The translations under genes and the position numbers were made by a program. This document shows positions 42,258 to 54,308 of a DNA stretch of 64,000 nucleotides, piece after piece. The notes below the pieces were generated by a model. That model searched no databases, was not told the DNA's origin, and saw nothing but the letters and a program-made list of their open reading frames with translations. How positions within the stretch are numbered: the stretch's first letter is position 1; every line of letters begins with the position of its first letter. The stretch lies in the IMG/VR virus record IMGVR_UViG_3300036944_001324, positions 186,001 to 250,000 of that record; one strand, 5' to 3'.

Positions 42258-44330
42258 ATGACAAACGAAGAACAAGAGTATCTCAAGATCAACGAGAAGC
42301 TGCGTGAGGCCGCGCCAGCGTACTACGTTGAAGACAAGCCCATCATGACCGATGCCGAATACGATCAATTGATCGTTCGTGCTCGCGAATTGGAAAAGCG
42401 TGTTGATAAAGCGATCGTCGATGCTGAACGCCTGAAGGGTACGCCACTGTACGACGTGGTTGGATCTGTTGCCAAGGGTCTTAAGCCTGCTAAGCATGAG
42501 ACACCTATGCTCAGTTTGCGTACTGAGACGAATACTTCCGATGAACCCATCCGTAATTTCCTGCTGAAAGTGGGAAAGCGGCTGGACGAACTTGGTTTTC
42601 CACCGAATTGTACCAGTTACTGTGCTGAGTACAAATTTGACGGACTGGCTTTGAGCCTCAAGTACAGGGATGGAAAACTTCTCCGTGCAGTTACCCGTGG
42701 CGACGGTTACGAAGGTGAAAACGTTACGCATAACGCTCTCGTCGTTAAAGGCATACCTACGACTATCGGTCTGAAGCGGGATCTGGAAGTTCGTGGTGAA
42801 GTGATGATGACTAAAGAGATGTTTGCTAGTTTGAATAAGCAAGCATTGATAAGCGGAAGTCGTGTCTTTGTAAACCCGCGTAACGCTGCCGCTGGTTCCA
42901 TGCGACTTCTCGATTCGAATGAATGCAAACGACGCGGACTAATCTTTGTTGCTTACAGCGCCATAGGGCCTGCGGTTGATATGGAAACCGACAGCCATCT
43001 CTATCGCATATTGACCTTGGAAAACCTGGGTTTTGAAATCGGGCTTACACCTCTACGTACTAAAACACCAGAGCGACTAGCGGAGTTCTACCAAAAGACT
43101 CTCAATGAACGGACCACAATACCGTTTGAAATCGATGGGGTAGTCTACAAAGTCGACTCTATCGAGCAACAAGAAAAGCTTGGTGTCATCGGTAAAGAAC
43201 CTGTCTGGGCAATTGCTCACAAGTTCCCACCGGAGGAAGCCACCACCAGACTCGAGAGCATCGACATCCAAGTCGGGCGCACTGGCAAGTTCACTCCCGT
43301 CGCCAAGTTGAAGCCTATCTTCGTGGGTGGCGTTACTGTATCGAGCGTGACGCTCAGTAACATCTTCGACGTGCGTCGCAAGGACATCCGTCCAGGCGAT
43401 ACGGTGTTCGTTCGTCGTGCTGGTGACGTGATCCCTGAGATCACGACACGAGCCAACCGTAAGCGTGATGGTTACGTTCCTAACTTCCAGATGCCTCCCC
43501 AGTGTCCGGTTTGCGGCGGACTTGCTATCCGTTTCAAAGGCGAAAGCAACTACCAATGCACCAACAAGTACGAGTGTCCGGCGCAACTCTCTGGCTCCAT
43601 CTTGCATTACGTCAGTCGTGCCTGTATGGACATCGAGGGTTTTGGTGAAGAGACGGTTGACCTGTTGACGAAAGAAGGCTACGTGCGTTCATTCGTTGAC
43701 TTGTACCGCTTGACACCACAGATCCTTACAGAAGTAGGATTGGGTCCGAAGAAAGGACAGAACCTGCTCGACGCCATCGATGGTTCTCGTGTGAACTCTC
43801 TAGCTCGTTTCATCTACGGGCTGGGTATTCGCTATGTGGGTGCCAACACTTCCAAGATTCTTGCTAATCGTTTCAAGACGATCGGTGCGCTCTTTGAAGC
43901 CAAGCGGGAAGAACTCATCAACCTGCCTGACATGGGGCCCGTTACAACGGACTCCGTGGTTTCCTACATCGGCAACGCGCACAGGCGAGCGTTGGTGTTT
44001 GAGACCATTGCGGTGGGTAAGTTGATTCTGACCACCGTAGAGCAACCTCCAAAGCCCGTAGGACCGCTCACAGGCCAATCTTTCGTGGTGTCTGGACGGT
44101 TGACACACTACGAAGCGATAGAGCCTTCTAAGACCCGTGAAGCCTTCATTGATGTTTTGGAGGATCTGGGTGCTTCTGTCACCGATAAGGTGAATAAAGA
44201 TACAACGGCACTTATCATAGGTGAGAAACCTTCGAGCAAGTTAGCCAAAGCGAAAGCTCTGGGCATCCGTGTTATGACAGACAAGGAAGCCATGGAACAG
44301 TTCATGAACCTGGAAGTCTCCACGTTCTAA
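42258..44330 (+). CDS. ligA: NAD-dependent DNA ligase
   Basis: TDAEYD, HETPMLSL, motif I EYKFDG, EVRGEV, NPRNAAAGS, WAIAHKF, OB fold, C4 Zn finger (CPVC...C...C), HhH repeats and C-terminal BRCT. Confidence 0.97.
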   Translation: MTNEEQEYLKINEKLREAAPAYYVEDKPIMTDAEYDQLIVRARELEKRVDKAIVDAERLKGTPLYDVVGSVAKGLKPAKHETPMLSLRTETNTSDEPIRNFLLKVGKRLDELGFPPNCTSYCAEYKFDGLALSLKYRDGKLLRAVTRGDGYEGENVTHNALVVKGIPTTIGLKRDLEVRGEVMMTKEMFASLNKQALISGSRVFVNPRNAAAGSMRLLDSNECKRRGLIFVAYSAIGPAVDMETDSHLYRILTLENLGFEIGLTPLRTKTPERLAEFYQKTLNERTTIPFEIDGVVYKVDSIEQQEKLGVIGKEPVWAIAHKFPPEEATTRLESIDIQVGRTGKFTPVAKLKPIFVGGVTVSSVTLSNIFDVRRKDIRPGDTVFVRRAGDVIPEITTRANRKRDGYVPNFQMPPQCPVCGGLAIRFKGESNYQCTNKYECPAQLSGSILHYVSRACMDIEGFGEETVDLLTKEGYVRSFVDLYRLTPQILTEVGLGPKKGQNLLDAIDGSRVNSLARFIYGLGIRYVGANTSKILANRFKTIGALFEAKREELINLPDMGPVTTDSVVSYIGNAHRRALVFETIAVGKLILTTVEQPPKPVGPLTGQSFVVSGRLTHYEAIEPSKTREAFIDVLEDLGASVTDKVNKDTTALIIGEKPSSKLAKAKALGIRVMTDKEAMEQFMNLEVSTF

Positions 44331-46154: not shown

Positions 46155-46279
46155 TGTTATTTGAGTAGTCATGCACGGCGAAACAGGAAGAATCCTTTGA
46201 CTCTTTCATACCCAACTACTTGCTCCTTCAATGGGGTGAGTAGTTGGGTTATTCCCTGTTTCTTTTTTGGTCCTCAATA

Positions 46280-47482
46280 ATGCCTTATCCAACCCCCAAC
46301 TATAGCTTGGCCGTTATGGCTAAGACGGCGATTCAGTTCTTTGAACAGAATACCGTACTGGCCGATTTGCAAATTGGTCAAGAGACTGACACCAAACGTT
46401 TCAAAATTGGTGATGGTGTCACTGCGTGGAATACGCTCCCCTACGCTGTACAGGGCAACGAGAACAGCATCTGGGTAGGGTTGTCTCCTGATGTAGGCAA
46501 CCTGCTGGAGCTCACGCTCGCTCGCAATGGCTTCTACCTGAACCCAGTTACGTTCGACGGCACGACGGTGCTCAACCAATCCATCGATGGAACGCTGACA
46601 GACATCACGCCGTACTTGACGGCTAACCAACAGCTGGCTGGCTTCGTAGCGGCTGGTTTGATGATTCGCAAAGTCGTCCTGGCTCTGGGTGCTGACTGGA
46701 ATCTGAATACCACTGACCCCATTCCCGCAACAACCGTCACGCAAGCCATTGACTCCGTCTCTGATGCTTTGACTTCGCTTGCGGGAACTGTTAGTGGTTT
46801 GATCAACGACTCTGCTGTTAGCGCTTCGACCACCTACTCTTCGACCAAGATCGGTACGCTGGTAAATGATGCCATCGCTGCGATCATTGGTGCCGCACCT
46901 GAAGCTCTGAACACAGTCTACGAACTAGCTGCCGCTCTCGGTAACAATCCCGATCTGGTGACGAACATCGTTACTGAGTTGGGACAGACTGTGAAGATCA
47001 CAGCGCAAACCCTGACGGCCCCGCAACAAGCCCAGGCTCGAACCAATATCGGCGCAGCTTCTGCAGCTGATCTGGGTAGCCCGGATGAGAACACTTTGAC
47101 TCTGGAAGCAAAGTACCTGTACGAAAAGTCAATCGCTACAGGCGGTATCGAGATCACAATCGAACCCAATCCATTGGTCATTGTGAAGACCGCTCCATTT
47201 GTGGCTAAAGTCATCTCTGATGGAAGTGTTCATCGAGAAGGTATTTACGCACTGGATACTTCTGGCGGGTCCTTCATCACACAAATGCCTGCAAACCCAC
47301 TGCCGGGTGATGAGGTGGAATACCTCGACTACAACGGGACTTTCGATACGGGACCTGCTGAGCTCTCTCCTAACGGGAAGAAGTTCATGGGACTTAACGA
47401 GAGTTACATTCTCAATCAAAAGAACCGAGGCCGCCGCTTCAAGTTCGTTGATGAGGACAAAGGTTGGATGCCAATGGCCTAA
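46280..47482 (+). CDS. tail fibre/adaptor protein
   Basis: N-terminal GQETDT.RFKIGDG...WN.LPY (hyaluronidase/Mtd-type N-domain); GAAPEALNT..ELAAALGNNP; C-terminal DTSGG...MPANP..GD.V...D..G...GW, a T4 gp34-type domain. Confidence 0.8.
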   Translation: MPYPTPNYSLAVMAKTAIQFFEQNTVLADLQIGQETDTKRFKIGDGVTAWNTLPYAVQGNENSIWVGLSPDVGNLLELTLARNGFYLNPVTFDGTTVLNQSIDGTLTDITPYLTANQQLAGFVAAGLMIRKVVLALGADWNLNTTDPIPATTVTQAIDSVSDALTSLAGTVSGLINDSAVSASTTYSSTKIGTLVNDAIAAIIGAAPEALNTVYELAAALGNNPDLVTNIVTELGQTVKITAQTLTAPQQAQARTNIGAASAADLGSPDENTLTLEAKYLYEKSIATGGIEITIEPNPLVIVKTAPFVAKVISDGSVHREGIYALDTSGGSFITQMPANPLPGDEVEYLDYNGTFDTGPAELSPNGKKFMGLNESYILNQKNRGRRFKFVDEDKGWMPMA

Positions 47483-47522: not shown

Positions 47523-48869
47523 TTATCCACCAAACCGCATTCCGATGGGTGCTTTCATACGGACGTACTCATCGAATTGCTTCTGAAGCTTTTCATGCTT
47601 CTCTGTCAGTTCTTGGAGAGCTTTCACCAAGACAGGAACAATAGAAGATTCGTTGATCTTCAATTTCTCCAATTGACTGGTGTCAACGATCACTGGTTTG
47701 TCGCCTTCGAGTTCCAGGATGTCTTGGGCAAGCCATCCGTAACGAACTACCCCGACACCAATGTCTGAATCACGGTTCTCGCGATAACGATAAGCGACAG
47801 GCTTGAGCTTCATCACAAAGTCAAGGCCGTGTTGAACGTCAGTGATGTCTGTCTTGTCGCGTTTGTCAGACACAATGGTCCAGGAGACCTTGACGTAAGC
47901 GTGCTCCACCGAAGAGGAACCAACCACGACACGGTTGTTCTCACTGGTCACGTCCATGACAGGGGAGTAAACACCCGCGTTGTTGACACCACCGAGGATG
48001 ATGTTGCCACTACCTGTCGACAAACGAGCACCCGCAGACGAGCCCAGACCGATGTTGTTGTTGCCGCCAATCAAAGAACGAAGTGCTTGGGCACCGACAG
48101 CTGTGTTGCCGTTACCAGTACCGCTAGCGAGTAGAGCTTCGAAGCCGAAGGCTACGTTGTAACTACCCATGTAGTTAAACCGCATGGAATGGTAACCGGA
48201 CGCAACGTTACCAACACCTTGCAGGTTGTTGTGCATGGACTCTTTACCAACCGCTACGTTAAAGCGACCAGTGCTGTTGTCCCGCAATGCAAGAGAGCCA
48301 ATGGCTGTGTTGTCGGAACCCGTGGTGTTGCGACCAAGGGACAAATTACCAATAGCGGTATTGTCATCACCCGTAGTCAGTTTGCCAAGAGCACCATTTC
48401 CAACAGCTGTAGTGTTGGAGGCTTCGGATGAAGATCCGATAGCGCGGGCACCAACGGCGGTGTTGTTGTTACCGGTGGTGTTGAGTGTGAGAGCACGTGC
48501 ACCCAATGCCGTATTGTTGTTCCCGGTGACGTTCAGAGTCAAACTGGAGTAGCCGAGCGAAGTGTTGTAACTGCCGGTGGTATTCTCACGAAGAGAAGCA
48601 AAACCAACCGCAGAGTTCTCTTTGCCGACGGTGGATTCTTTGAGCGCTGCGAAACCAATAGCCGTTTGGCCATGAATGTTTATTGCCGACGACAAAGTAA
48701 AATGACCCACGGCAACGTTGCCGTCACCGAATGAGTTATTCATCAGGGCGCAGCGCCCGATAGCCGTGTTGTTGTTCCCGGTAGTCAGAGCTGCAAGGGA
48801 TGCATAACCGAAGGTTGTATTTGTTCCTGCAGTTGGCGTGCTACTCGTTTGTTGATTGCTATCAGCCAT
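47523..48869 (-). CDS. tail fibre/spike with 17-aa beta-helix repeats and a C-terminal peptidase S74 chaperone
   Basis: About 17 copies of G..NTA.G..AL..NTT; SDKRDKTDI autocleavage motif; C-terminal coiled coil. Confidence 0.85.
   Translation of the reverse strand: MADSNQQTSSTPTAGTNTTFGYASLAALTTGNNNTAIGRCALMNNSFGDGNVAVGHFTLSSAINIHGQTAIGFAALKESTVGKENSAVGFASLRENTTGSYNTSLGYSSLTLNVTGNNNTALGARALTLNTTGNNNTAVGARAIGSSSEASNTTAVGNGALGKLTTGDDNTAIGNLSLGRNTTGSDNTAIGSLALRDNSTGRFNVAVGKESMHNNLQGVGNVASGYHSMRFNYMGSYNVAFGFEALLASGTGNGNTAVGAQALRSLIGGNNNIGLGSSAGARLSTGSGNIILGGVNNAGVYSPVMDVTSENNRVVVGSSSVEHAYVKVSWTIVSDKRDKTDITDVQHGLDFVMKLKPVAYRYRENRDSDIGVGVVRYGWLAQDILELEGDKPVIVDTSQLEKLKINESSIVPVLVKALQELTEKHEKLQKQFDEYVRMKAPIGMRFGG
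47990..48830 (-). repeat. 17-aa tandem repeat array
   Basis: Periodic NTAxG motif every 17 residues. Confidence 0.85.
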
Positions 48870-48888: not shown

Positions 48889-49233
48889 TTAGATCAGCAC
48901 TTCATCAACCAACTGGTCGAAACCGTTGTAGGTCAAGGTGAATGTGCGTTGAACCAGCATGGTAGTTCCATCCACGTCGTAGATGGTGTCAGTGCGACGC
49001 GTGTAACGGTTGCTACCGTCTGGCAGAGAAAACACTGCTGTTTTCGCAGTGGTTCCATCAGTACGTTTCCACGTCGTGGTAACAAAGATACCATTGGCAT
49101 CACGACCGGTACGGTAGACCGACAAACCATCAGTTACAACACCCAGCGAAAGGGCGTTGACTTTCTTACTGACAAGACCAACGTCTCGCCCGACGGAACC
49201 AATGCGATTCGAAAGTTCAGTCCAAAGAGACAT
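48889..49233 (-). CDS. tail-fibre-associated protein
   Basis: DANGIF......DGT...S...Y..RT.T.Y..DGT motif seen in tail-fibre loci. Confidence 0.6.
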   Translation of the reverse strand: MSLWTELSNRIGSVGRDVGLVSKKVNALSLGVVTDGLSVYRTGRDANGIFVTTTWKRTDGTTAKTAVFSLPDGSNRYTRRTDTIYDVDGTTMLVQRTFTLTYNGFDQLVDEVLI

Positions 49234-49247
49234 GATTTATTTTTCCT

Positions 49248-49931
49248 TTACCAGACGATGGCACGAATAGCCTCAATGGTGGCTGCTTGTGCGATTTGTT
49301 GTTTGAGGGTTTGGGCCTTGGAGAAGTTGTACAAGCCCTGCATATACATGGCACTGTAGAACTCTGTCCAGTCCGCAAGGGTTGCTACTTGAACGTAGCT
49401 GTCATCCATGGCCTTCCAACCACCAGGCCAGCCAGGTGGAAGGGCGTTGCGCAGCAAGATGCTTCCGTTAGTTCCATCGATGTCCGAACGAGACAAAGGA
49501 TCGCATGCGATCTTCTTGCCTTTGAACATGAAGAACGAATTGTTGGCAGCAAGGCGCTGCGCGTTGATTTCTTTGTCTTTGGTATTGCGAAGATCGGTCA
49601 GGTACGCATCGAGTTCTTCGAGGGTAGGTTGTCGGTTACCCCACGGATACTCAGAGGGCATCTCTGGTGGGGTTGCGATGTCTTCAACGGGTGGCAGTTC
49701 AAGAGCCAGCCAAGCGAGACCTTGTTCAATGGCATTGTTAAGGGGAGTCAAATCTTCGTTTGTCCAGATGGGGCGTGCTACCACGTTTTGCAAGTGGGTC
49801 ACGTTGTTCTTGAGAGATGCAATGTCTGCTTCTGACTTGGTCTCATCCGCAAGAATGCGGTTGATGGTCGAGACACTAAAGAGTGCCGATGTCAGTTCTT
49901 GAGCAGCACTGCGTTGAATATTGGGCAACAT
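49248..49931 (-). CDS. DUF4376-containing tail fibre assembly protein
   Basis: GAGGA RBS before ATG 49931; K..EINA.RL.AN...F...G....D..SR.DI ... W...D..Y ... F.KAQ.LK..I..A.T...I.AI.W. Confidence 0.75.
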   Translation of the reverse strand: MLPNIQRSAAQELTSALFSVSTINRILADETKSEADIASLKNNVTHLQNVVARPIWTNEDLTPLNNAIEQGLAWLALELPPVEDIATPPEMPSEYPWGNRQPTLEELDAYLTDLRNTKDKEINAQRLAANNSFFMFKGKKIACDPLSRSDIDGTNGSILLRNALPPGWPGGWKAMDDSYVQVATLADWTEFYSAMYMQGLYNFSKAQTLKQQIAQAATIEAIRAIVW

Positions 49932-50218
49932 AACAGGGGATTCCTCGTATGCGGTTAAAGGTTGGAACGCTTGAAGCAAATAGGTCGAACTATAGCAGTG
50001 CGTTCGCTGCAGCACATAAAACGCTTGGGCTGAACATTCTAGAGATGCAGGTGGTGATGTGAGTTCGGGAGAAGGTGTGTGGCGTCTATGACTGAAGTCA
50101 TAAAATACAAGAACAAATGGAGTGCTTGGTCTAAAATTATATCTGGCTTCTAATGGTTGTTATCATTGGAACTTTTATGAGATCAATCTTAACCAAACAC
50201 TAATTAGAGGTTTTTCAA

Positions 50219-50809
50219 GTGAAACTCTTGTCCTACAAAGTCATTCGCCCTGGCTTTCAAGCGCTCGGAAGCATCAGCGTACGCATTCGTCTTCGCAGCC
50301 CATTGTCGCACACTGAAGTGATGTATGAGCCTGGTGATGGCGTGGACCATCTGATGCCGGACGGTACCTGTGATCCTGATGAAAACGGTGCTTACTGGTG
50401 CGCGTCTTCGACGGCAGCTGAAAAGCTGCCTCACTATGACAATCTGAAGTTCACCAATCGCCGCGCTGGTAAGTTCGGCGGTGTGCGCTTCAAGCGTATC
50501 GTTCCAAAGCCAGACCACTGGCTGATCCAAGACGTGTTGGGATTTGATCCTGTCAAATCCGCTCAATGGTTCTTCAACAACCTCGGCATGGCCTACGACT
50601 GGAAACACATTCTGTCGTTCATCGCTGTGGGTTGGAACTGGGTGTTCCGTCAAAGTCACGACAAGGTTACCTGTACAGAAGCGTGCGCTGCATCTTTCGG
50701 GTTTCCCGAGGCAGACAACTTCGATCCCAAGAATCTGCCGCCGGTTGTTGAGCGTGTCAATCGCTTGATGGCGGAGTTGTTCAACCAAATGAAAAAGTCT
50801 GGTGAGTAA
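50219..50809 (+). CDS. permuted papain-like NlpC/P60 (YiiX/YebB-like) protein
   Basis: SHTE (His) precedes G.AYDW and CTEAC (Cys), the permuted catalytic order. Confidence 0.7.
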   Translation: MKLLSYKVIRPGFQALGSISVRIRLRSPLSHTEVMYEPGDGVDHLMPDGTCDPDENGAYWCASSTAAEKLPHYDNLKFTNRRAGKFGGVRFKRIVPKPDHWLIQDVLGFDPVKSAQWFFNNLGMAYDWKHILSFIAVGWNWVFRQSHDKVTCTEACAASFGFPEADNFDPKNLPPVVERVNRLMAELFNQMKKSGE

Positions 50810-50841
50810 GAACTGGACGTTCAATCTAAACGGAACAAGCA

Positions 50842-51702
50842 ATGTTCGATAATTTGATTTTTCGTTACGGCACTGTAACAGGTCCCGGTACGTCCACCAA
50901 CAATGCGCTTGTACTGTGGGATGGGACCAGTGGAACGCTGATCAAAAACAGTACCGTGACGGTCCCGACCAGTGGCTTTCTGGGTGACGTCGTTGGGCCG
51001 GCGAGTACTACCAACAACGCGGTGGCACTCTGGGACGGTACCAGCGGTAGGCTGTTGAAGAACGGGACGCTAACTCTTCCAACCAGCGCTATCGTCGGTA
51101 TCAGCGACACACAAGCACTCACTAACAAAACGGTAAGAGTCGCCGACAATACTAGCGCATGGTCTGGTGCAGCTTTTCTAGAGGTAAAGTCAACACCAGC
51201 GACGGAAGCAGCAGGCGGCACCGGCGGGGCTTTCATGAGCTTTCACCGGTCAAGTGCTCATGCTGTTAACCTTGGTCTGGACGCTAACAACGTCTTTAAG
51301 ATCTCCGGATGGTCACTTGGTAGTCTAGTCCCGTGGTCAGTTACGCACTCAGGTGTCATGCAAGTGTACCGGGCAGTTTATTTCGGTATGTATAATAGCG
51401 TGATTGCAAATACTGCTGCAACTACTGTTGACTTTTCACTGGGTCAAAAAGCTCACTTGACTTTGCAAGCTAGTACCACTATATCGTGCACTTTCCCAGG
51501 CATAGGTAATTACCAGATCCTGATGATTCAAGACGGTACTGGAAACCGAACGATAACATGGGGTGCCGGTCTCGCACCTTTGTACGTTGGTAGTGCCTCA
51601 GCACCGGCTATAAATCTAGCCGCAAACACTATTACGCTGGTGTCAATTTATTGGTCATCCGCTAATGCATTTATCGCTGTCAGCAAAGTGAATGCTGCGT
51701 AA
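50842..51702 (+). CDS. tail fibre protein
   Basis: N-terminal 2x38-aa GP.STNNA..WDGTSG.L.KN repeat; FMSFHR...A..LGLD.NN.F..GWS fibre motif; C-terminal QDGTG.RTITW domain. Confidence 0.75.
   Translation: MFDNLIFRYGTVTGPGTSTNNALVLWDGTSGTLIKNSTVTVPTSGFLGDVVGPASTTNNAVALWDGTSGRLLKNGTLTLPTSAIVGISDTQALTNKTVRVADNTSAWSGAAFLEVKSTPATEAAGGTGGAFMSFHRSSAHAVNLGLDANNVFKISGWSLGSLVPWSVTHSGVMQVYRAVYFGMYNSVIANTAATTVDFSLGQKAHLTLQASTTISCTFPGIGNYQILMIQDGTGNRTITWGAGLAPLYVGSASAPAINLAANTITLVSIYWSSANAFIAVSKVNAA
50872..51099 (+). repeat. 2 x 38-aa tandem repeat
   Basis: TVTGPGTSTNNALVLWDGTSGTLIKNS... / DVVGPASTTNNAVALWDGTSGRLLKNG... Confidence 0.8.
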
Positions 51703-52193
51703 TGGCTTCCGCAACTCTTACCTTAACAGTTAGTTCTTCCACTGGTTGGGTCAATCCCACCAATGCGTTTGTATCTAACAACGCTTACGCCTCGTACAGC
51801 AGCGTTACTACATCAGGTACTAATTTTTATTTTCGGTTCACCACGAACGCCGCTACTCTTTTACCGGCGAATGCAGTTATAACTGGTGTTCGGATGGATG
51901 TCGAGTACAGGACAAATAACGCGACGCCTCAACCTCGTTTCTGTGCAGGTCCCGGTGATTTTGGCGGTACTGCAAACCCAGTCGTGGTGACAACCACCGA
52001 TGTTGTGTATGTTTTTGGCGGACCAGGTAATACTCTTGGTGCTGTAACGCGTGACGACGTCTCCACCGCTAGTATTCAATTCGGAAACAACGCTGCGGGC
52101 ACCTCTGTTCACTACATCGACAACGTTGTCATGTACGTGGACTGGGAACTACCTAAAGCCGGCAACACTCTTTTTCATGGAGAGAACTTTTGA
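51702..52193 (+). CDS. putative tail-fibre-associated beta-sandwich protein
   Basis: TAATG coupling; Thr/Asn-rich beta pattern ending in YIDNVVMYVDW. Confidence 0.6.
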   Translation: MASATLTLTVSSSTGWVNPTNAFVSNNAYASYSSVTTSGTNFYFRFTTNAATLLPANAVITGVRMDVEYRTNNATPQPRFCAGPGDFGGTANPVVVTTTDVVYVFGGPGNTLGAVTRDDVSTASIQFGNNAAGTSVHYIDNVVMYVDWELPKAGNTLFHGENF

Positions 52194-52723
52194 TGTTCTA
52201 CGAACCATCCTCTAAAAAGACCTATGCAAGTATCCAGGACTTCAAACTGGAATACAGGAACACTTCGTTCGGTGAACTCGACACAGAAGAAGAACGCAAT
52301 GTCTTCGGTCTGTTCACCCTTCACGACGTTCGCCCGACTTACGACAGCAAGCTTCAAGTCATTGAAGAAGGCGGTATTGTTAACCGGTCGGGTCTGTGGT
52401 ATAAAAACTACACGGTTAAAGACAAGCAGCTCAGTCACGAAGATCGAGCTCGTATTTTCAACCAGCGTTTTAATGGCGCGTTGATTGCTTTGTTCGATGA
52501 AACTGCAAATGAGCGTGACTACGACACACATACGACCTGTTTGATGCGAGCCGGTTATCCCAACCCGTGGCAAAAGGAAGCTCAAGCCTTCGGTACATGG
52601 ATGGACGGCTGTAACGAAGCTGCGTACAAGATCATGAATCAGATCACTGTTGGTGAAAAGGCAATCCCCAAGGATGTCAAAGAACTGATCAGTAGTTTTC
52701 CCAAGATGGTCTGGCCTGACTAA
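52193..52723 (+). CDS. tail fibre assembly/chaperone protein
   Basis: TGATG coupling; L.D.TA.ER.YD....C..RAGYPNPWQ.EA.AF..W.D...and P..VWP motifs. Confidence 0.7.
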   Translation: MFYEPSSKKTYASIQDFKLEYRNTSFGELDTEEERNVFGLFTLHDVRPTYDSKLQVIEEGGIVNRSGLWYKNYTVKDKQLSHEDRARIFNQRFNGALIALFDETANERDYDTHTTCLMRAGYPNPWQKEAQAFGTWMDGCNEAAYKIMNQITVGEKAIPKDVKELISSFPKMVWPD

Positions 52724-52732
52724 GACAGCACT

Positions 52733-53680
52733 GTGTTCATTCTCAGTGGAAGGCAACGCATCTTTGTCTCGATAGCGGCTTATCGAGATAGTGAAGCGCC
52801 TGCCACGGTACGTGATTTACTGGAGAAGGCCGACAGACCTCATCTGGTCAAGATCGGCATTCTCAATCAGATTTGTCCCAAAGAAGACATCCGCTGCAAA
52901 GTAGGTGGCTGGACAAATGTTCAAGAGCGTATCGTTGACTACACGGAGTCCAAAGGAGCGTGCTGGGCACGCTCCTACATATGGACGAATCTCCTTGAAG
53001 ACGAAGACTTCGTTCTTCAGATAGACAGCCATAGTCGCTTTGACCATGGCTGGGACACAACGCTGCTTAAAACTTTCGAGAAGCTTCAAGACGCTTCAGC
53101 GGTACTTACCCATTACCCGATGCGGTACGACCCCTTGACGAACGTTAAGAGCGCTCAGATGTACACTCGCTTTGACATCCAGAGTTTCAACCAATACGGG
53201 TTCCCTGTTATTAGCTCGGCGGCGTTGGCACTGAAAGACGCACCGGTAACACCTGCTAAAACAGCTTTCATAGCTGGTGGTTGTTTGTTCACACGGGCAA
53301 GAACCATCAAGAACGTTCCGTACGATCCCCATCTATACTTCCAAGGTGAGGAGATCAACTACGCAATCCGGTTGTGGACACATGGTCACAACCTGTACTT
53401 GCCTAACAAGCCCTTCATGTACCATGACTACGGTAATGGTCGTGCAAGGCGTATGCATTGGCAGGATGTACAGCGATGGAAGCAGATGAACGATCTGTCC
53501 ATCATGCGAAACAAGCATGTTCTTGATCTTGGTATTGCTACTGACCCAGCTTCGTTGATTGATATCGACAAGTACAGTCTTGGTAAACACCGCACCCTGT
53601 CAGATTGGGAGCGATTCTCTGGCGTCTATTTGAGAGCCCAGACCTTGACTGAAAAAGCCAAGACTGGTTCATTCCAGTGA
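52733..53680 (+). CDS. GT60/Gnt1-like alpha-GlcNAc transferase (Pfam 'GlcNAc' family)
   Basis: IFVSIAAYRD.E, GACWAR, LQIDSHSRF (DxH), FIAGGCLF, YDP.LYF.GEEI...RLWTHG. Confidence 0.85.
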   Translation: MFILSGRQRIFVSIAAYRDSEAPATVRDLLEKADRPHLVKIGILNQICPKEDIRCKVGGWTNVQERIVDYTESKGACWARSYIWTNLLEDEDFVLQIDSHSRFDHGWDTTLLKTFEKLQDASAVLTHYPMRYDPLTNVKSAQMYTRFDIQSFNQYGFPVISSAALALKDAPVTPAKTAFIAGGCLFTRARTIKNVPYDPHLYFQGEEINYAIRLWTHGHNLYLPNKPFMYHDYGNGRARRMHWQDVQRWKQMNDLSIMRNKHVLDLGIATDPASLIDIDKYSLGKHRTLSDWERFSGVYLRAQTLTEKAKTGSFQ

Positions 53681-53710
53681 TTTTCAGCAATACATTATCT
53701 ATAGGACGAA

Positions 53711-53753
53711 AGCATAAGAAGCCCAGGCTTTGCGGCCTGGGCTCTATGCCGTC
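53711..53753 (+). terminator. CATAA/TATGCCG-flanked hairpin
   Basis: agcccaggc/gcctgggct stem; no U-tract. Confidence 0.55.
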
Positions 53754-53780
53754 TTGTCAATCAAAGCGAAAGAAAGTAAC

Positions 53781-54308
53781 ATGAAAGATAAATTTCAACC
53801 CCTGTCAACTGCCGGATATTTGCTAGCAGTTGTTGTTCATAACTGGCACATTCTCTTCGGGAAAATGCAGCTGATGTTTTATAAGCTCTTCGACCAAATG
53901 GAGTGCTTTTGGTACGTTCGGGTTCGGCGGTTTGGTAGTAAGAGTGATTACCATCTCGGCAAGATGGCTTCCAACATAAAGAACGACCCTCAGGCAAGTA
54001 AAGAGCTTCAGCGTCAGTCTATGATCTTCTCGTTGGTCTCGTTGCTTTACGCACATCCTCACGACATTCACAAAGTAATGCGGGTTTTCTATCCACTGAT
54101 GTACATGCGTTTTGCATGGCGGAAATGGTTCTTCCAACGAATGGAGATCGTGTTTGCTGTTGAAGATGAGAAAGATTTGTTGCGGGCTGGTGATCTTTTG
54201 GGATTTGGCTTCCGTGCCAAAATCCAAAGCCGTTATGGTCTTGACATCCTCAACGAATACGAATCCAAAGGAAACCTTCATGAACTTCTCAGTCAAAAAA
54301 CTCAATGA
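53781..54308 (+). CDS. hypothetical protein
   Basis: Packed ORF. Confidence 0.65.
   Translation: MKDKFQPLSTAGYLLAVVVHNWHILFGKMQLMFYKLFDQMECFWYVRVRRFGSKSDYHLGKMASNIKNDPQASKELQRQSMIFSLVSLLYAHPHDIHKVMRVFYPLMYMRFAWRKWFFQRMEIVFAVEDEKDLLRAGDLLGFGFRAKIQSRYGLDILNEYESKGNLHELLSQKTQ

What the first reader, a model, noticed from the sequence alone, without database searches (positions are those of the whole stretch)
50842..53680. Eukaryote-type GT60 O-GlcNAc transferase as the last gene of a tail-fibre operon: possible virion glycosylation system
Seen: ORF 52733..53680 carries the GlcNAc-family motifs (IFVSIAAYRD, QIDSH, FIAGGCLF, F.GEE, RLWTHG). It lies 9 nt downstream of a tail-fibre chaperone, in a tightly packed run of fibre, beta-sandwich and chaperone genes. 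The fibre proteins are very Ser/Thr-rich. Known: GT60 enzymes (Dictyostelium Gnt1, trypanosome mucin GlcNAc transferases) add alpha-GlcNAc to protein hydroxyls, and some mycobacteriophages glycosylate their virions. Inferred: this jumbo phage may glycosylate its receptor-binding fibres, affecting folding, host range or shielding.
Basis: partly seen in the sequence, partly recalled or inferred. Interest (0 to 1): 0.75.

Follow-up and report, generated by a model that had tools for sequence, protein, structure and literature searches.

The report
Glycosyltransferase ending a phage fibre operon
A 272-kb phage carries, as the last gene of its tail-fibre gene block, a soluble enzyme of the family that attaches the sugar GlcNAc to proteins; comparison with other phages and bacteria suggests, without proving, that it sugar-coats phage surface proteins.

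Summary
ORF 52733-53680 (+, 315 aa) is a full-length PF11397/GT60 glycosyltransferase (E 6e-69). All the quoted motifs are present, and the Asp-x-His and Gly-Glu-Glu motifs are invariant among relatives. It has no membrane segment. It is the last of five tightly packed + strand genes (50219-53680), and a stable hairpin follows it.

"Eukaryote-type" is not supported. The nearest relatives are phage and proteobacterial genes: at least 588 IMG/VR contigs and 541 bacterial species genomes.

The order fibre, DUF4376 protein, papain-like 196-aa protein, GT60 recurs in seven other contigs (GT identity 43-80%). In this phage a three-gene cassette (fibre, beta-sandwich, chaperone-like) sits between the last two genes. 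A relative and a metagenome strain carry a different cassette in that slot.

In unrelated phages, GT60 genes often lie just downstream of Thr/Pro-repeat "mucin-like" proteins, the classic GT60 acceptor type, or inside a crAss-like tail module. In some bacteria they lie next to giant adhesins.

Virion or fibre O-glycosylation is therefore the best reading (about 0.5), but it rests on gene context only. Donor, acceptor and transcription are untested. I found no paper on GT60 in phages.

The parts
46244..47482 (+). Tail-fibre protein (412 aa as listed; the real start is probably near 46283)
   Evidence: 32 PHROG hits, many of them tail fibre/tail. Homologous fibres stand upstream of GT60 in relatives, 29-71% identity.
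47523..48869 (-). Tail fibre/spike with a C-terminal Peptidase_S74 intramolecular chaperone domain (448 aa)
   Evidence: PF13884 at 4.5e-10. phrog_4636 tail spike at 1.4e-59.
48889..49233 (-). Small Thr-rich fibre-associated protein (114 aa)
   Evidence: Similar to the C-terminal parts of fibre proteins of relatives. S+T 22.8%, rank 2 of 253.
49248..50015 (-). DUF4376 protein (255 aa), the tail-fibre-assembly-like gene of the module
   Evidence: PF14301 at 4.3e-14. Homologues lie directly upstream of the 196-aa gene in relatives. It is inverted here and in L181.
50219..50809 (+). First gene of the + strand run: 196-aa permuted papain-like (YiiX/C92, NlpC/P60-LRAT fold) protein, the conserved upstream neighbour of GT60 in relatives
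   Evidence: AF2 model with alignment, pLDDT 93.8. Foldseek hits to 3kw0 and YiiX 2if6 and to C92/NlpC-P60/LRAT AFDB clusters. H31 and C152 are invariant. 40-88% identical homologues stand next to GT60 in L010, L011, L013, L181, L183, L184 and L212.
50842..51702 (+). Fibre-like protein (286 aa) with two N-terminal 'LWDGTSG...T-x-P-T-S' repeats; first gene of the inserted cassette
   Evidence: phrog_28473 tail fibre at 2e-06 and phrog_4900 tail at 1.1e-05. Repeats at residues 25 and 63, TVPT/TLPT at 40 and 78. S+T 22.4%. No homologue in this slot in L010, L011 or L013.
51702..52193 (+). 163-aa beta-sandwich protein, a possible receptor-binding or adaptor module of the cassette
   Evidence: Atlas model with pTM 0.78. 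Structural neighbours are beta-sandwich accessory domains and viral proteins, TM up to 0.88. No Pfam or PHROG hit.
52190..52723 (+). 177-aa tail-fibre-chaperone-like protein; last gene of the cassette
   Evidence: Atlas structure neighbours PF16778 Phage_tail_APC (TM 0.57/0.63) and DUF4376 (TM 0.59). Only 6 sequence homologues. hhalign against the local DUF4376 proteins was negative.
52733..53680 (+). GT60 / PF11397 glycosyltransferase, 315 aa, soluble; last gene of the run
   Evidence: PF11397 at 6e-69. Invariant D98-x-H100 and G205-E-E207. No membrane segment, maximum 19-residue hydropathy 0.94. Only one such gene in the genome.
53719..53744 (.). G+C-rich 10-bp stem-loop 39 nt after the GT60 stop; a putative terminator or RNA end marking the end of the unit
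   Evidence: Pattern scan. Sequence read directly. Folding of 53681-53781 gives -34 kcal/mol, z -4.2, 0 of 200 shuffles as stable. There is no clean U-tract on the + strand.
51165..52728 (+). Variable host-range cassette segment: C-terminal two thirds of the 286-aa fibre, the 163-aa gene and the 177-aa gene
   Evidence: In run X11 one contig matches 50100-51164 and another starts at 52729, while the stretch between is unlike the window. L181 has genes of 177, 505 and 502 aa in this slot. L010, L011 and L013 have nothing there.

Best explanation
ORF 52733-53680 encodes a soluble, cytoplasmic GT-A glycosyltransferase of the GT60/PF11397 family. I propose that it is made late, together with the fibre genes. 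I propose that it transfers a HexNAc, most likely GlcNAc from host UDP-GlcNAc, onto hydroxyl groups of phage structural proteins before or during assembly. The most likely acceptors are the Ser/Thr-rich fibre proteins encoded in the same block.

Because the receptor-binding cassette upstream is exchanged between strains while the enzyme stays, the acceptor sites would lie in conserved fibre parts, or the enzyme would be tolerant of sequence.

Shown: family membership, conserved catalytic-type motifs, solubility, gene order and its conservation.

Inferred: donor, acceptor, timing of expression and biological effect (folding, stability, shielding or host range).
For: 1. Family: PF11397 at 6e-69. 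All characterised GT60 enzymes are polypeptide alpha-GlcNAc transferases, acting on mucin-type Ser/Thr (PMC8724618) or on Skp1 hydroxyproline (PMC6939170).

2. The enzyme looks active. D98-x-H100, G-E-E and several His/Arg residues are invariant across 25 relatives down to 38% identity.

3. It is the 3' gene of a packed five-gene + strand run and is followed by a stable hairpin.

4. The order fibre, DUF4376, papain-like protein, GT60 is kept in L181, L011/L012, L010, L013, L183, L184 and L212, with GT identity 80-43%. Downstream genes are not conserved. A more distant 259-kb phage contig (L037) has fibre, a 124-aa gene, then GT60.

5. In unrelated phages GT60 neighbours point to protein acceptors. 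In 16 of 64 loci with a same-strand upstream gene, that gene is a Thr/Pro-repeat mucin-like protein, against 18 of about 794 other ORFs. After collapsing loci with GT at least 90% identical, the counts are 6 of 41 against 13 of 506 (Fisher p 0.0016). One crAss-like contig has GT60 between two parts of the muzzle/virion structural protein.

6. Bacterial homologues in Tepidimonas and other Proteobacteria lie directly after giant LapA-like RTX adhesins with a methyltransferase, and often with LapD/LapG.

7. A DNA route is unlikely. The genome has one thymidylate-synthase-family gene, and it passes the NCBIfam equivalog cut-off for ThyA.
Against: - All the evidence is contextual. No glycan, donor or acceptor has been observed.
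- This genome has no mucin-like repeat protein. The only patch is 30 residues in a 2614-aa protein, so the strongest cross-phage argument does not transfer directly.
- The 3' end of a fibre module is a classic site for unrelated accessory genes.
- In XacN1-type phages the GT60 gene lies among replication genes next to a carbamoyltransferase. In L004 it lies by a UvsX-like gene.
- Of three Vitreoscilla-type chromosomal contexts, only one has a surface protein (an autotransporter) upstream.
- The fibre cassette is swapped while GT60 stays, which fits a mere boundary gene equally well.
- Co-transcription is not shown.
Confidence: 0.5

Rival explanations
1. Accessory ('moron'-like) gene directed at the host. 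The enzyme would glycosylate a host envelope precursor, a surface structure or a host protein during infection. This could mask receptors and block superinfection, or retune the cell. It would sit at the fibre-module boundary only because that site tolerates insertions.
For: - The gene lies exactly at the border between the conserved fibre module and a non-conserved downstream region.
- The preceding slot is recombinogenic.
- The papain-like 196-aa gene, which also ends fibre modules, occurs without GT60 in 64 of 65 IMG/VR loci and in Acidovorax phage AP1, so GT60 is an addition in this lineage.
- The closest cellular homologues are lone chromosomal genes in Vitreoscilla-type bacteria.
Against: - The enzyme has no membrane segment or signal sequence, unlike typical envelope-modifying phage enzymes.
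- The gene is retained through GT divergence to 43% identity in a lineage that shows no sign of lysogeny in these loci.
- Characterised family members act on proteins, not on lipid-linked glycans.
Confidence: 0.2
2. A glycosyltransferase with an acceptor unrelated to fibres, such as another virion protein (capsid, or the giant 2614-aa protein) or a small molecule or glycan. Its position after the fibre genes would then be inherited synteny without functional meaning.
For: - Distant phage GT60 genes head clusters with GT7, GT25, GT34, GT2, carbamoyltransferase and FkbM methyltransferase genes, and some of these clusters lie beside replication genes.
- The only Ser/Thr/Pro-rich patch in this genome is in a 2614-aa protein far from the fibre block.
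Against: - The tight linkage to the fibre block is conserved while flanking genes turn over.
- In L183 and L184 the GT60 start overlaps the end of the preceding gene, which suggests coupled expression.
Confidence: 0.15
3. DNA-modifying glycosyltransferase. The enzyme would glycosylate hydroxymethylated bases of phage DNA to escape restriction, as T-even phages do.
For: - Phage glycosyltransferases are best known for DNA glucosylation (reviewed in PMC12619734).
- In XacN1 the homologue lies near DNA polymerase and RNase H.
Against: - The genome has only one thymidylate-synthase-family gene. It scores above the ThyA equivalog cut-off and keeps the Asn of dUMP-specific enzymes.
- No second hydroxymethylase candidate was found.
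- I know of no GT60/PF11397 enzyme that acts on DNA.
- The gene sits in the late structural block.
Confidence: 0.05

Closest known systems
GT60 polypeptide alpha-GlcNAc transferases of protists (Dictyostelium and Trypanosoma cruzi mucin-type O-GlcNAc initiation)
   Same: Same Pfam family over its whole length. A GT-A type Asp-x-His motif is conserved. In other phages the GT60 gene stands directly after Thr/Pro-repeat proteins that look like the mucin domains these enzymes modify (PMC8724618).
   Different: The protist enzymes are Golgi membrane proteins. This one is a 315-aa soluble protein. Its nearest relatives are phage and proteobacterial, not eukaryotic. This genome has no mucin-like acceptor. 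Donor and linkage are untested.
Gnt1, the cytoplasmic UDP-GlcNAc:hydroxyproline-Skp1 GlcNAc transferase (works after prolyl hydroxylase PhyA)
   Same: Same family, soluble and cytoplasmic, modifying a folded protein (PMC6939170). The phage genome also encodes a prolyl-4-hydroxylase-like 2OG oxygenase, as does the related contig behind L037. Eukaryotic fusions of the two domains exist.
   Different: The two phage genes are about 36 kb apart. Two other complete GT60-bearing jumbo phages, and XacN1, lack the oxygenase. There is no Skp1-like target, and hydroxyproline dependence is pure conjecture.
Mycobacteriophage virion glycosylation (Freeman et al. 2023, cited in PMC12619734)
   Same: Phage-encoded glycosyltransferase genes adjacent to structural genes. 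The proposed outcome, glycans on virion proteins, is the same.
   Different: There the glycans were shown by mass spectrometry on capsid and tail-tube C-termini, and, from my own knowledge of that work, several transferases of other families are involved. Here there is one GT60 gene, fibre context and no biochemical evidence.
Cytoplasmic adhesin-glycosylating transferases of bacteria (HMW1C for HMW1; Aah/TibC for AIDA-I/TibA). This comparison is from my own knowledge, not tested here.
   Same: A soluble transferase encoded next to a long beta-rich surface fibre that it modifies before export. Bacterial GT60 homologues stand next to LapA-like adhesins, and in one case an autotransporter.
   Different: Different enzyme families (GT41 and heptosyltransferases). 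The bacterial GT60/adhesin link is itself only a gene-neighbourhood observation.
T4 alpha- and beta-glucosyltransferases (DNA glucosylation)
   Same: Phage-encoded soluble sugar-nucleotide transferases.
   Different: Different folds and families. They need hydroxymethylcytosine, for which this genome shows no enzyme.

Membership tests
Pfam PF11397 / CAZy GT60 | Full-length match to the family profile above the curated cut-off | tested here: met
   233.6 bits against a cut-off of 21, E 6e-69; profile positions 2-43 and 97-348 of 352 are covered.
Pfam PF11397 / CAZy GT60 | Conserved GT-A type acidic metal/nucleotide-binding motif (DxD/DxH) and other catalytic-core residues | tested here: met
   D98-S-H100, D19, G205-E-E207, H231 and H242 are invariant in 25 relatives. 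Assigning roles to these residues is an inference from general GT-A knowledge. No solved structure was found by sequence.
Pfam PF11397 / CAZy GT60 | UDP-GlcNAc donor with retaining alpha-transfer | not testable with these tools
   Known for characterised members only.
Pfam PF11397 / CAZy GT60 | Polypeptide hydroxyl (Ser/Thr or hydroxyproline) as acceptor | tested here: inconclusive
   Context favours protein acceptors, but this genome has no mucin-like protein and no biochemistry exists.
'Eukaryote-type' GT60 (recent eukaryotic origin) | Nearest relatives are eukaryotic | tested here: not met
   814 hits, the nearest being metagenomic phage and proteobacterial. 541 bacterial species genomes, best Vitreoscilla at 51%. 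At least 588 IMG/VR contigs. 59 of the 100 nearest Atlas clusters are PF11397 and mostly viral; eukaryotic clusters appear only as fused, more distant structural neighbours.
Phage virion glycosylation system (mycobacteriophage type) | Glycosyltransferase gene(s) linked to structural genes | tested here: met
   Last gene of the fibre block, conserved in seven other contigs.
Phage virion glycosylation system (mycobacteriophage type) | Glycan demonstrated on virion proteins | not testable with these tools
   Needs purified virions and mass spectrometry.
Phage virion glycosylation system (mycobacteriophage type) | Several transferases or sugar-modifying enzymes acting together | tested here: not met
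   One PF11397 gene and no GT2 gene in the genome. Other phages do have such clusters.
Tail-fibre assembly chaperone (for the 177-aa ORF 52190-52723) | Sequence or profile match to PF16778, PF14301 or related families | tested here: not met
   No Pfam hit. hhalign against the local DUF4376 proteins gave probability 0.2%.
Tail-fibre assembly chaperone (for the 177-aa ORF 52190-52723) | Same fold, and a position directly after a fibre gene | tested here: met
   Atlas structure neighbours PF16778 (TM 0.57/0.63) and DUF4376 (TM 0.59/0.53). It follows the fibre-like and beta-sandwich genes.
DNA-glycosylating phage transferase | A base hydroxymethylase in the same genome to supply the acceptor | tested here: not met
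   The only thymidylate-synthase-family gene passes the ThyA equivalog cut-off, 205.7 bits against 108.
Permuted papain-like YiiX/C92 (NlpC/P60-LRAT) fold (for the 196-aa ORF 50219-50809) | Fold match plus His-before-Cys catalytic pair | tested here: met
   Model pLDDT 93.8. Foldseek: 3kw0 and 2if6 with probability 0.72-0.90 and TM about 0.4; AFDB clusters named C92, NlpC/P60 and LRAT at E 2e-3 to 1e-2; nearer unnamed clusters at E 7e-8. H31 and C152 invariant. No Pfam or NCBIfam hit, so this is fold-level membership only.

The most novel reading that the evidence does not exclude
Tailed phages widely run a GT60-initiated, protist-like 'mucin-type' O-GlcNAc glycosylation of their own surface proteins. 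In many uncultivated phages the enzyme would act on giant Thr/Pro-repeat proteins encoded just upstream, and further transferases would extend the glycan. In this jumbo-phage lineage a minimal one-enzyme version would be tied to the exchangeable receptor-binding fibre module. It might be coupled to the phage's own prolyl-4-hydroxylase-like enzyme, giving hydroxyproline-linked GlcNAc as on Skp1. Related bacterial enzymes would do the same to giant adhesins.
Probability: 0.3. Interest if true: 0.8.

Novelty: new variant of a known kind. Interest (0 to 1): 0.6.

Why it matters
Glycans on phage particles have been shown in very few cases, mainly mycobacteriophages, where they alter immune recognition. 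If a single soluble GT60 enzyme decorates receptor-binding fibres, three things follow.

- Host range, particle stability and antibody recognition would depend on a modification that fibre sequence alone does not reveal. That matters for host prediction and for phage engineering.
- The survey done here shows this enzyme family in at least 588 viral contigs, often next to mucin-like proteins, and in 541 bacterial species, sometimes next to giant adhesins. I found no paper on either.
- The finding therefore opens a testable route to a possibly widespread protein O-glycosylation system outside eukaryotes, with a small, soluble and easily expressed enzyme.

Tried and rejected
- Near-identity DNA search of GenBank phages found no match. 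Only four phages have a 27-29% identical protein. The phage has no described relative.
- Sequence and profile searches of the PDB with the GT found nothing, so no catalytic-residue mapping onto a solved structure was possible.
- Single-sequence AF2 of the 196-aa protein was useless (pLDDT 37.6). The run with an alignment worked.
- hhalign of the 177-aa family against the local DUF4376 proteins was negative.
- Complex prediction of GT60 with the 196-aa protein gave 'no answer'. It is not evidence either way.
- Idea: the papain-like protein is an obligate partner of GT60. Rejected, because 64 of 65 IMG/VR loci with that protein lack GT60.
- Idea: the prolyl-hydroxylase-like gene generally co-occurs with phage GT60. 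Not supported. It is present in this genome and in the related contig behind L037, but absent from XacN1 and from two other complete jumbo phages.
- Idea: the Vitreoscilla homologue is an autotransporter partner. Weak, because only 1 of 3 such chromosomal contexts has the autotransporter.
- PHROG annotation of the genes upstream of distant GT60 genes did not show tail annotations. Most are of unknown function, and phrog_15511 matches the Thr/Pro repeat itself. These mucin-like proteins are therefore not shown to be virion components.
- A sigma-70 promoter scan gave no more sites than shuffled sequence.
- Literature searches for GT60 or PF11397 in phages found nothing relevant. The two key papers on phage glycosylation are not held.
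- RNA evidence: only short contigs in one metatranscriptome library, which may be DNA.


Full report
**Where the window lies.** The window is bases 186001-250000 of a 271,654-bp IMG/VR virus record judged 99% complete. It has no near relative in GenBank phages. Near-identical DNA occurs in shale-gas, aquifer, wastewater, biofilm, river, soil and freshwater metagenomes.

**The observation.**
- ORF 52733-53680 (+, GTG start, 315 aa) matches Pfam PF11397 'GlcNAc' at E 6e-69, 233.6 bits against a cut-off of 21. It also matches phrog_24687 'glycosyltransferase'. It is the only such gene in the genome.
- In an alignment of 25 relatives down to 38% identity, D19, Q96-I-D98, H100, G205-E-E207, R213, T216, G218, H231 and H242 are invariant. 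This is what an active GT-A enzyme with an Asp-x-His metal/nucleotide motif would show. The assignment of roles is my inference.
- No 19-residue window exceeds a hydropathy of 0.94, so the protein is soluble.
- No solved structure is detectable by sequence or profile.

**The gene run.** On the + strand the genes are 50219-50809 (196 aa), 50842-51702 (286 aa), 51702-52193 (163 aa), 52190-52723 (177 aa) and 52733-53680 (GT60). They are separated by 32, -1, -4 and 9 nt.
- Upstream lies a 203-nt A+T-rich divergent intergenic region.
- Thirty-nine nt downstream lies a 10-bp G+C-rich stem-loop at 53719-53744. Folding of 53681-53781 gives -34 kcal/mol and z -4.2, with 0 of 200 shuffles as stable.
- This fits one transcription unit that ends with GT60, but no transcript data exist. 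A metatranscriptome library holds only a few 150-240-nt contigs on the 196-aa, 177-aa and GT60 genes, and these may be DNA.
- The sigma-70 scan is uninformative.

**What the neighbours are.**
- The 286-aa protein hits tail-fibre PHROGs weakly. It carries two N-terminal 'LWDGTSG...T-x-P-T-S' repeats.
- The 163-aa protein is a beta-sandwich by its Atlas model.
- The 177-aa protein has no family hit and only six homologues. Its model resembles PF16778 tail-assembly chaperones and DUF4376 proteins (TM 0.57-0.63), so 'chaperone' holds at fold level only. A profile comparison with the local DUF4376 proteins failed.
- Upstream on both strands lie a 412-aa fibre, an S74-chaperone fibre/spike, a 114-aa Thr-rich protein and a DUF4376 protein.
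- These proteins rank 2, 3, 4 and 14 of 253 genome proteins for Ser+Thr content. That is true but typical of fibres.

**The conserved partner is not the chaperone.** I fetched the contexts of GT60 relatives.
- L010 (a 255-kb contig, GT 55% identical), L011/L012 (66%) and L013 (49%) all show fibre(s), a DUF4376 protein, a 192-198-aa protein, then GT60.
- BLAST shows that the 192-198-aa protein is the homologue of window ORF 50219-50809, not of the 177-aa ORF.
- The same order recurs in L183 (46%), L184 (43%) and L212 (44%). In L183 and L184 the GT60 start overlaps the previous gene.
- L181, a 256-kb contig with GT 80% identical, has the window's overall layout, including the inverted S74-fibre/DUF4376 segment. 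Between the 196-aa homologue and GT60 it carries genes of 177, 505 and 502 aa.
- In wastewater run X11 one contig matches 50100-51164 and another starts at 52729, exactly at the GT60 start. The stretch between is unlike the window.
- So 50842-52723 is an exchangeable fibre / beta-sandwich / chaperone cassette. It is inserted between two constant genes, and GT60 is the constant 3' end of the module.
- Genes downstream of GT60 are not conserved among these contigs.
- A more distant 259-kb phage contig, binned into an 'Aurantimicrobium' MAG, shares 40-48% identical proteins with this genome. It has a 270-aa fibre, a 124-aa gene and then GT60 at 42%.

**The 196-aa protein.** With an alignment of 42 homologues AF2 gives pLDDT 93.8.
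- Foldseek finds the permuted papain-like proteins 3kw0 and YiiX (probability 0.72-0.90, TM about 0.4). It also finds AFDB clusters named C92/YiiX, NlpC/P60 and LRAT.
- His31 and Cys152 are invariant.
- The family has no Pfam model.
- In Acidovorax phage AP1 it follows the 'tail fiber assembly protein' and precedes the holin.
- Of 65 IMG/VR loci with this protein, seven have a detectable DUF4376 gene just upstream and only one has GT60. It is a common terminal gene of fibre modules, and GT60 is an addition in the jumbo lineage.
- A complex prediction of the two proteins gave no answer.

**Is it 'eukaryote-type'? No.**
- The large protein search returned 814 hits. The closest (50-80% identity) are unnamed metagenomic proteins. 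At about 40% come many proteobacterial proteins (Magnetococcales, Tepidimonas, Telmatospirillum), often fused to a C-terminal SAM methyltransferase.
- 541 bacterial species genomes encode a relative. The best are Vitreoscilla stercoraria (51%) and V. massiliensis (48%).
- At least 588 IMG/VR contigs do as well.
- 59 of the 100 nearest Atlas clusters are PF11397 and mostly viral. Eukaryotic clusters appear only as more distant structural neighbours with fused domains.

**What acceptor do relatives suggest?** The characterised GT60 enzymes start mucin-type O-glycans on Ser/Thr-rich domains (PMC8724618) or modify hydroxyproline of Skp1 (PMC6939170).
- Among 79 distant viral loci, most GT60 proteins are about 405-435 aa.
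- In 16 loci the gene immediately upstream on the same strand is a protein with long Thr/Pro repeats. These run up to 1428 aa, with up to 45% Ser+Thr and 13% Pro.
- That is 16 of 64 such upstream genes, against 18 of about 794 other ORFs. After collapsing loci whose GT is at least 90% identical, the counts are 6 of 41 against 13 of 506, Fisher p 0.0016.
- The genes downstream are often further transferases (GT7, GT25, GT34, GT2-like), carbamoyltransferases and FkbM methyltransferases. GT60 therefore heads glycan-building clusters there.
- In a crAss-like contig GT60 sits between the N-terminal and C-terminal parts of the muzzle/virion structural protein.
- In Tepidimonas and other Proteobacteria the homologue directly follows a 2,200-2,400-aa LapA-like RTX adhesin and a methyltransferase, often with LapD/LapG nearby.
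- In V. stercoraria it follows an S8 autotransporter. Two related chromosomal contexts lack this.
- Counter-examples exist. In XacN1 it lies by DNA polymerase, RNase H and a carbamoyltransferase. In L004 it lies by a UvsX-like gene.
- The mucin-like proteins are not shown to be virion parts.
- This genome and its close relatives have no mucin-like protein.

**Other routes checked in the genome.**
- There is no GT2 gene.
- The one thymidylate-synthase-family gene passes the ThyA equivalog cut-off, so a hydroxymethyl-base acceptor for DNA glycosylation is unlikely.
- There is a prolyl-4-hydroxylase-like 2OG oxygenase at genome 3418-4266. It is also present on the related contig behind L037. It is absent from XacN1 and from two other complete GT60-bearing jumbo phages.
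- Eukaryotic fusions of this oxygenase domain with GT60 exist. The Skp1-like hydroxyproline route is an attractive but weak idea.

**Verdict.**
- The best explanation is a late, soluble polypeptide HexNAc (probably GlcNAc) transferase that modifies phage structural proteins, most likely fibres (confidence 0.5).
- The rivals are a host-directed accessory enzyme (0.2), a transferase with an unrelated acceptor (0.15) and DNA glycosylation (0.05).
- Virion glycosylation is known in mycobacteriophages (cited in PMC12619734). I found no paper on GT60/PF11397 in phages.
- I class it as a new variant of a known kind, with an interest of 0.6. The broader pattern seen in other phages and bacteria is the most valuable lead.

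Noticed in passing
L104:3249-5954, L124:1652-5938, L158:469-2088, L127:1372-5940, L007:2454-5450 (other phages): Giant phage proteins made largely of Thr/Pro repeats (TPTLTPT..., up to 1428 aa, Ser+Thr up to 45%) stand directly upstream of GT60 genes in many uncultivated phages. One also carries RCC1-like repeats. phrog_15511 appears to model the repeat itself.
   Followed up: partly
window 50219-50809: An uncharacterised family with no Pfam model and more than 120 homologues. It has a permuted papain-like (YiiX/C92, NlpC/P60-LRAT) fold and invariant His31/Cys152. It commonly closes phage tail-fibre modules, for example before the holin in Acidovorax phage AP1.
   Followed up: yes
window 51165-52728; L181:8001-11578: An exchangeable receptor-binding cassette. 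A wastewater strain replaces this stretch, with breakpoints inside the 286-aa fibre gene and exactly at the GT60 start. A relative carries genes of 177, 505 and 502 aa in the same slot.
   Followed up: partly
G000:C1:3418-4266 (outside the window); L100: A prolyl-4-hydroxylase-like 2OG-Fe(II) oxygenase (PF13640, 282 aa, with His-x-Asp and distal His motifs) is encoded about 36 kb from GT60 across the record ends. A related 259-kb phage contig has one about 30 kb from its GT60.
   Followed up: partly
L037 (NZ_JAVWTF010000001.1, 259,245 bp): A contig filed as an 'Aurantimicrobium sp.' MAG shares several 40-48% identical proteins with this phage. It looks like a jumbo-phage genome binned into a bacterial MAG.
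   Followed up: partly
L015, L018, L021, L027, L035, L039, L071, L092 (bacterial genomes): Bacterial GT60 homologues lie directly after giant LapA-like RTX adhesins together with a methyltransferase (PF10119 regulator-type domain), often next to LapD/LapG. Many other bacterial homologues are GT60-methyltransferase fusions of about 520 aa. This may be an undescribed adhesin-modification pair.
   Followed up: partly
L006:191-10097 (crAss-like contig): A GT60 gene sits between a 1892-aa protein matching the N-terminal part of phrog_14478 (virion structural protein) and a 264-aa protein with the crAss muzzle C-terminal domain. It looks as if it was inserted into a split muzzle gene.
   Followed up: no
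window 47523-48869 (-): A 448-aa fibre/spike built of many short 'NTA-G' type repeats, ending in a Peptidase_S74 intramolecular chaperone domain. Together with the 114-aa and DUF4376 genes it is inverted relative to most relatives.
   Followed up: no
window 53730-54308: The listed TTG start overlaps the hairpin. The real start is probably the ATG at 53782 (MKDKFQ...). This protein and the following genes have no family hits and no homologues in the related loci.
   Followed up: no
window 42258-44330: A 690-aa NAD-dependent DNA ligase. Its best phage relatives are only 35-39% identical (Acinetobacter and Aeromonas phages, Goslar), which underlines how isolated this phage lineage is.
   Followed up: no
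L128, L121, L124, L144 and others (IMG/VR): GT60 proteins that are at least 90% identical occur in loci with different neighbours; some have a mucin-like gene upstream and some do not. This suggests the GT60 gene moves between phage genomes or that its neighbourhood recombines quickly.
   Followed up: no
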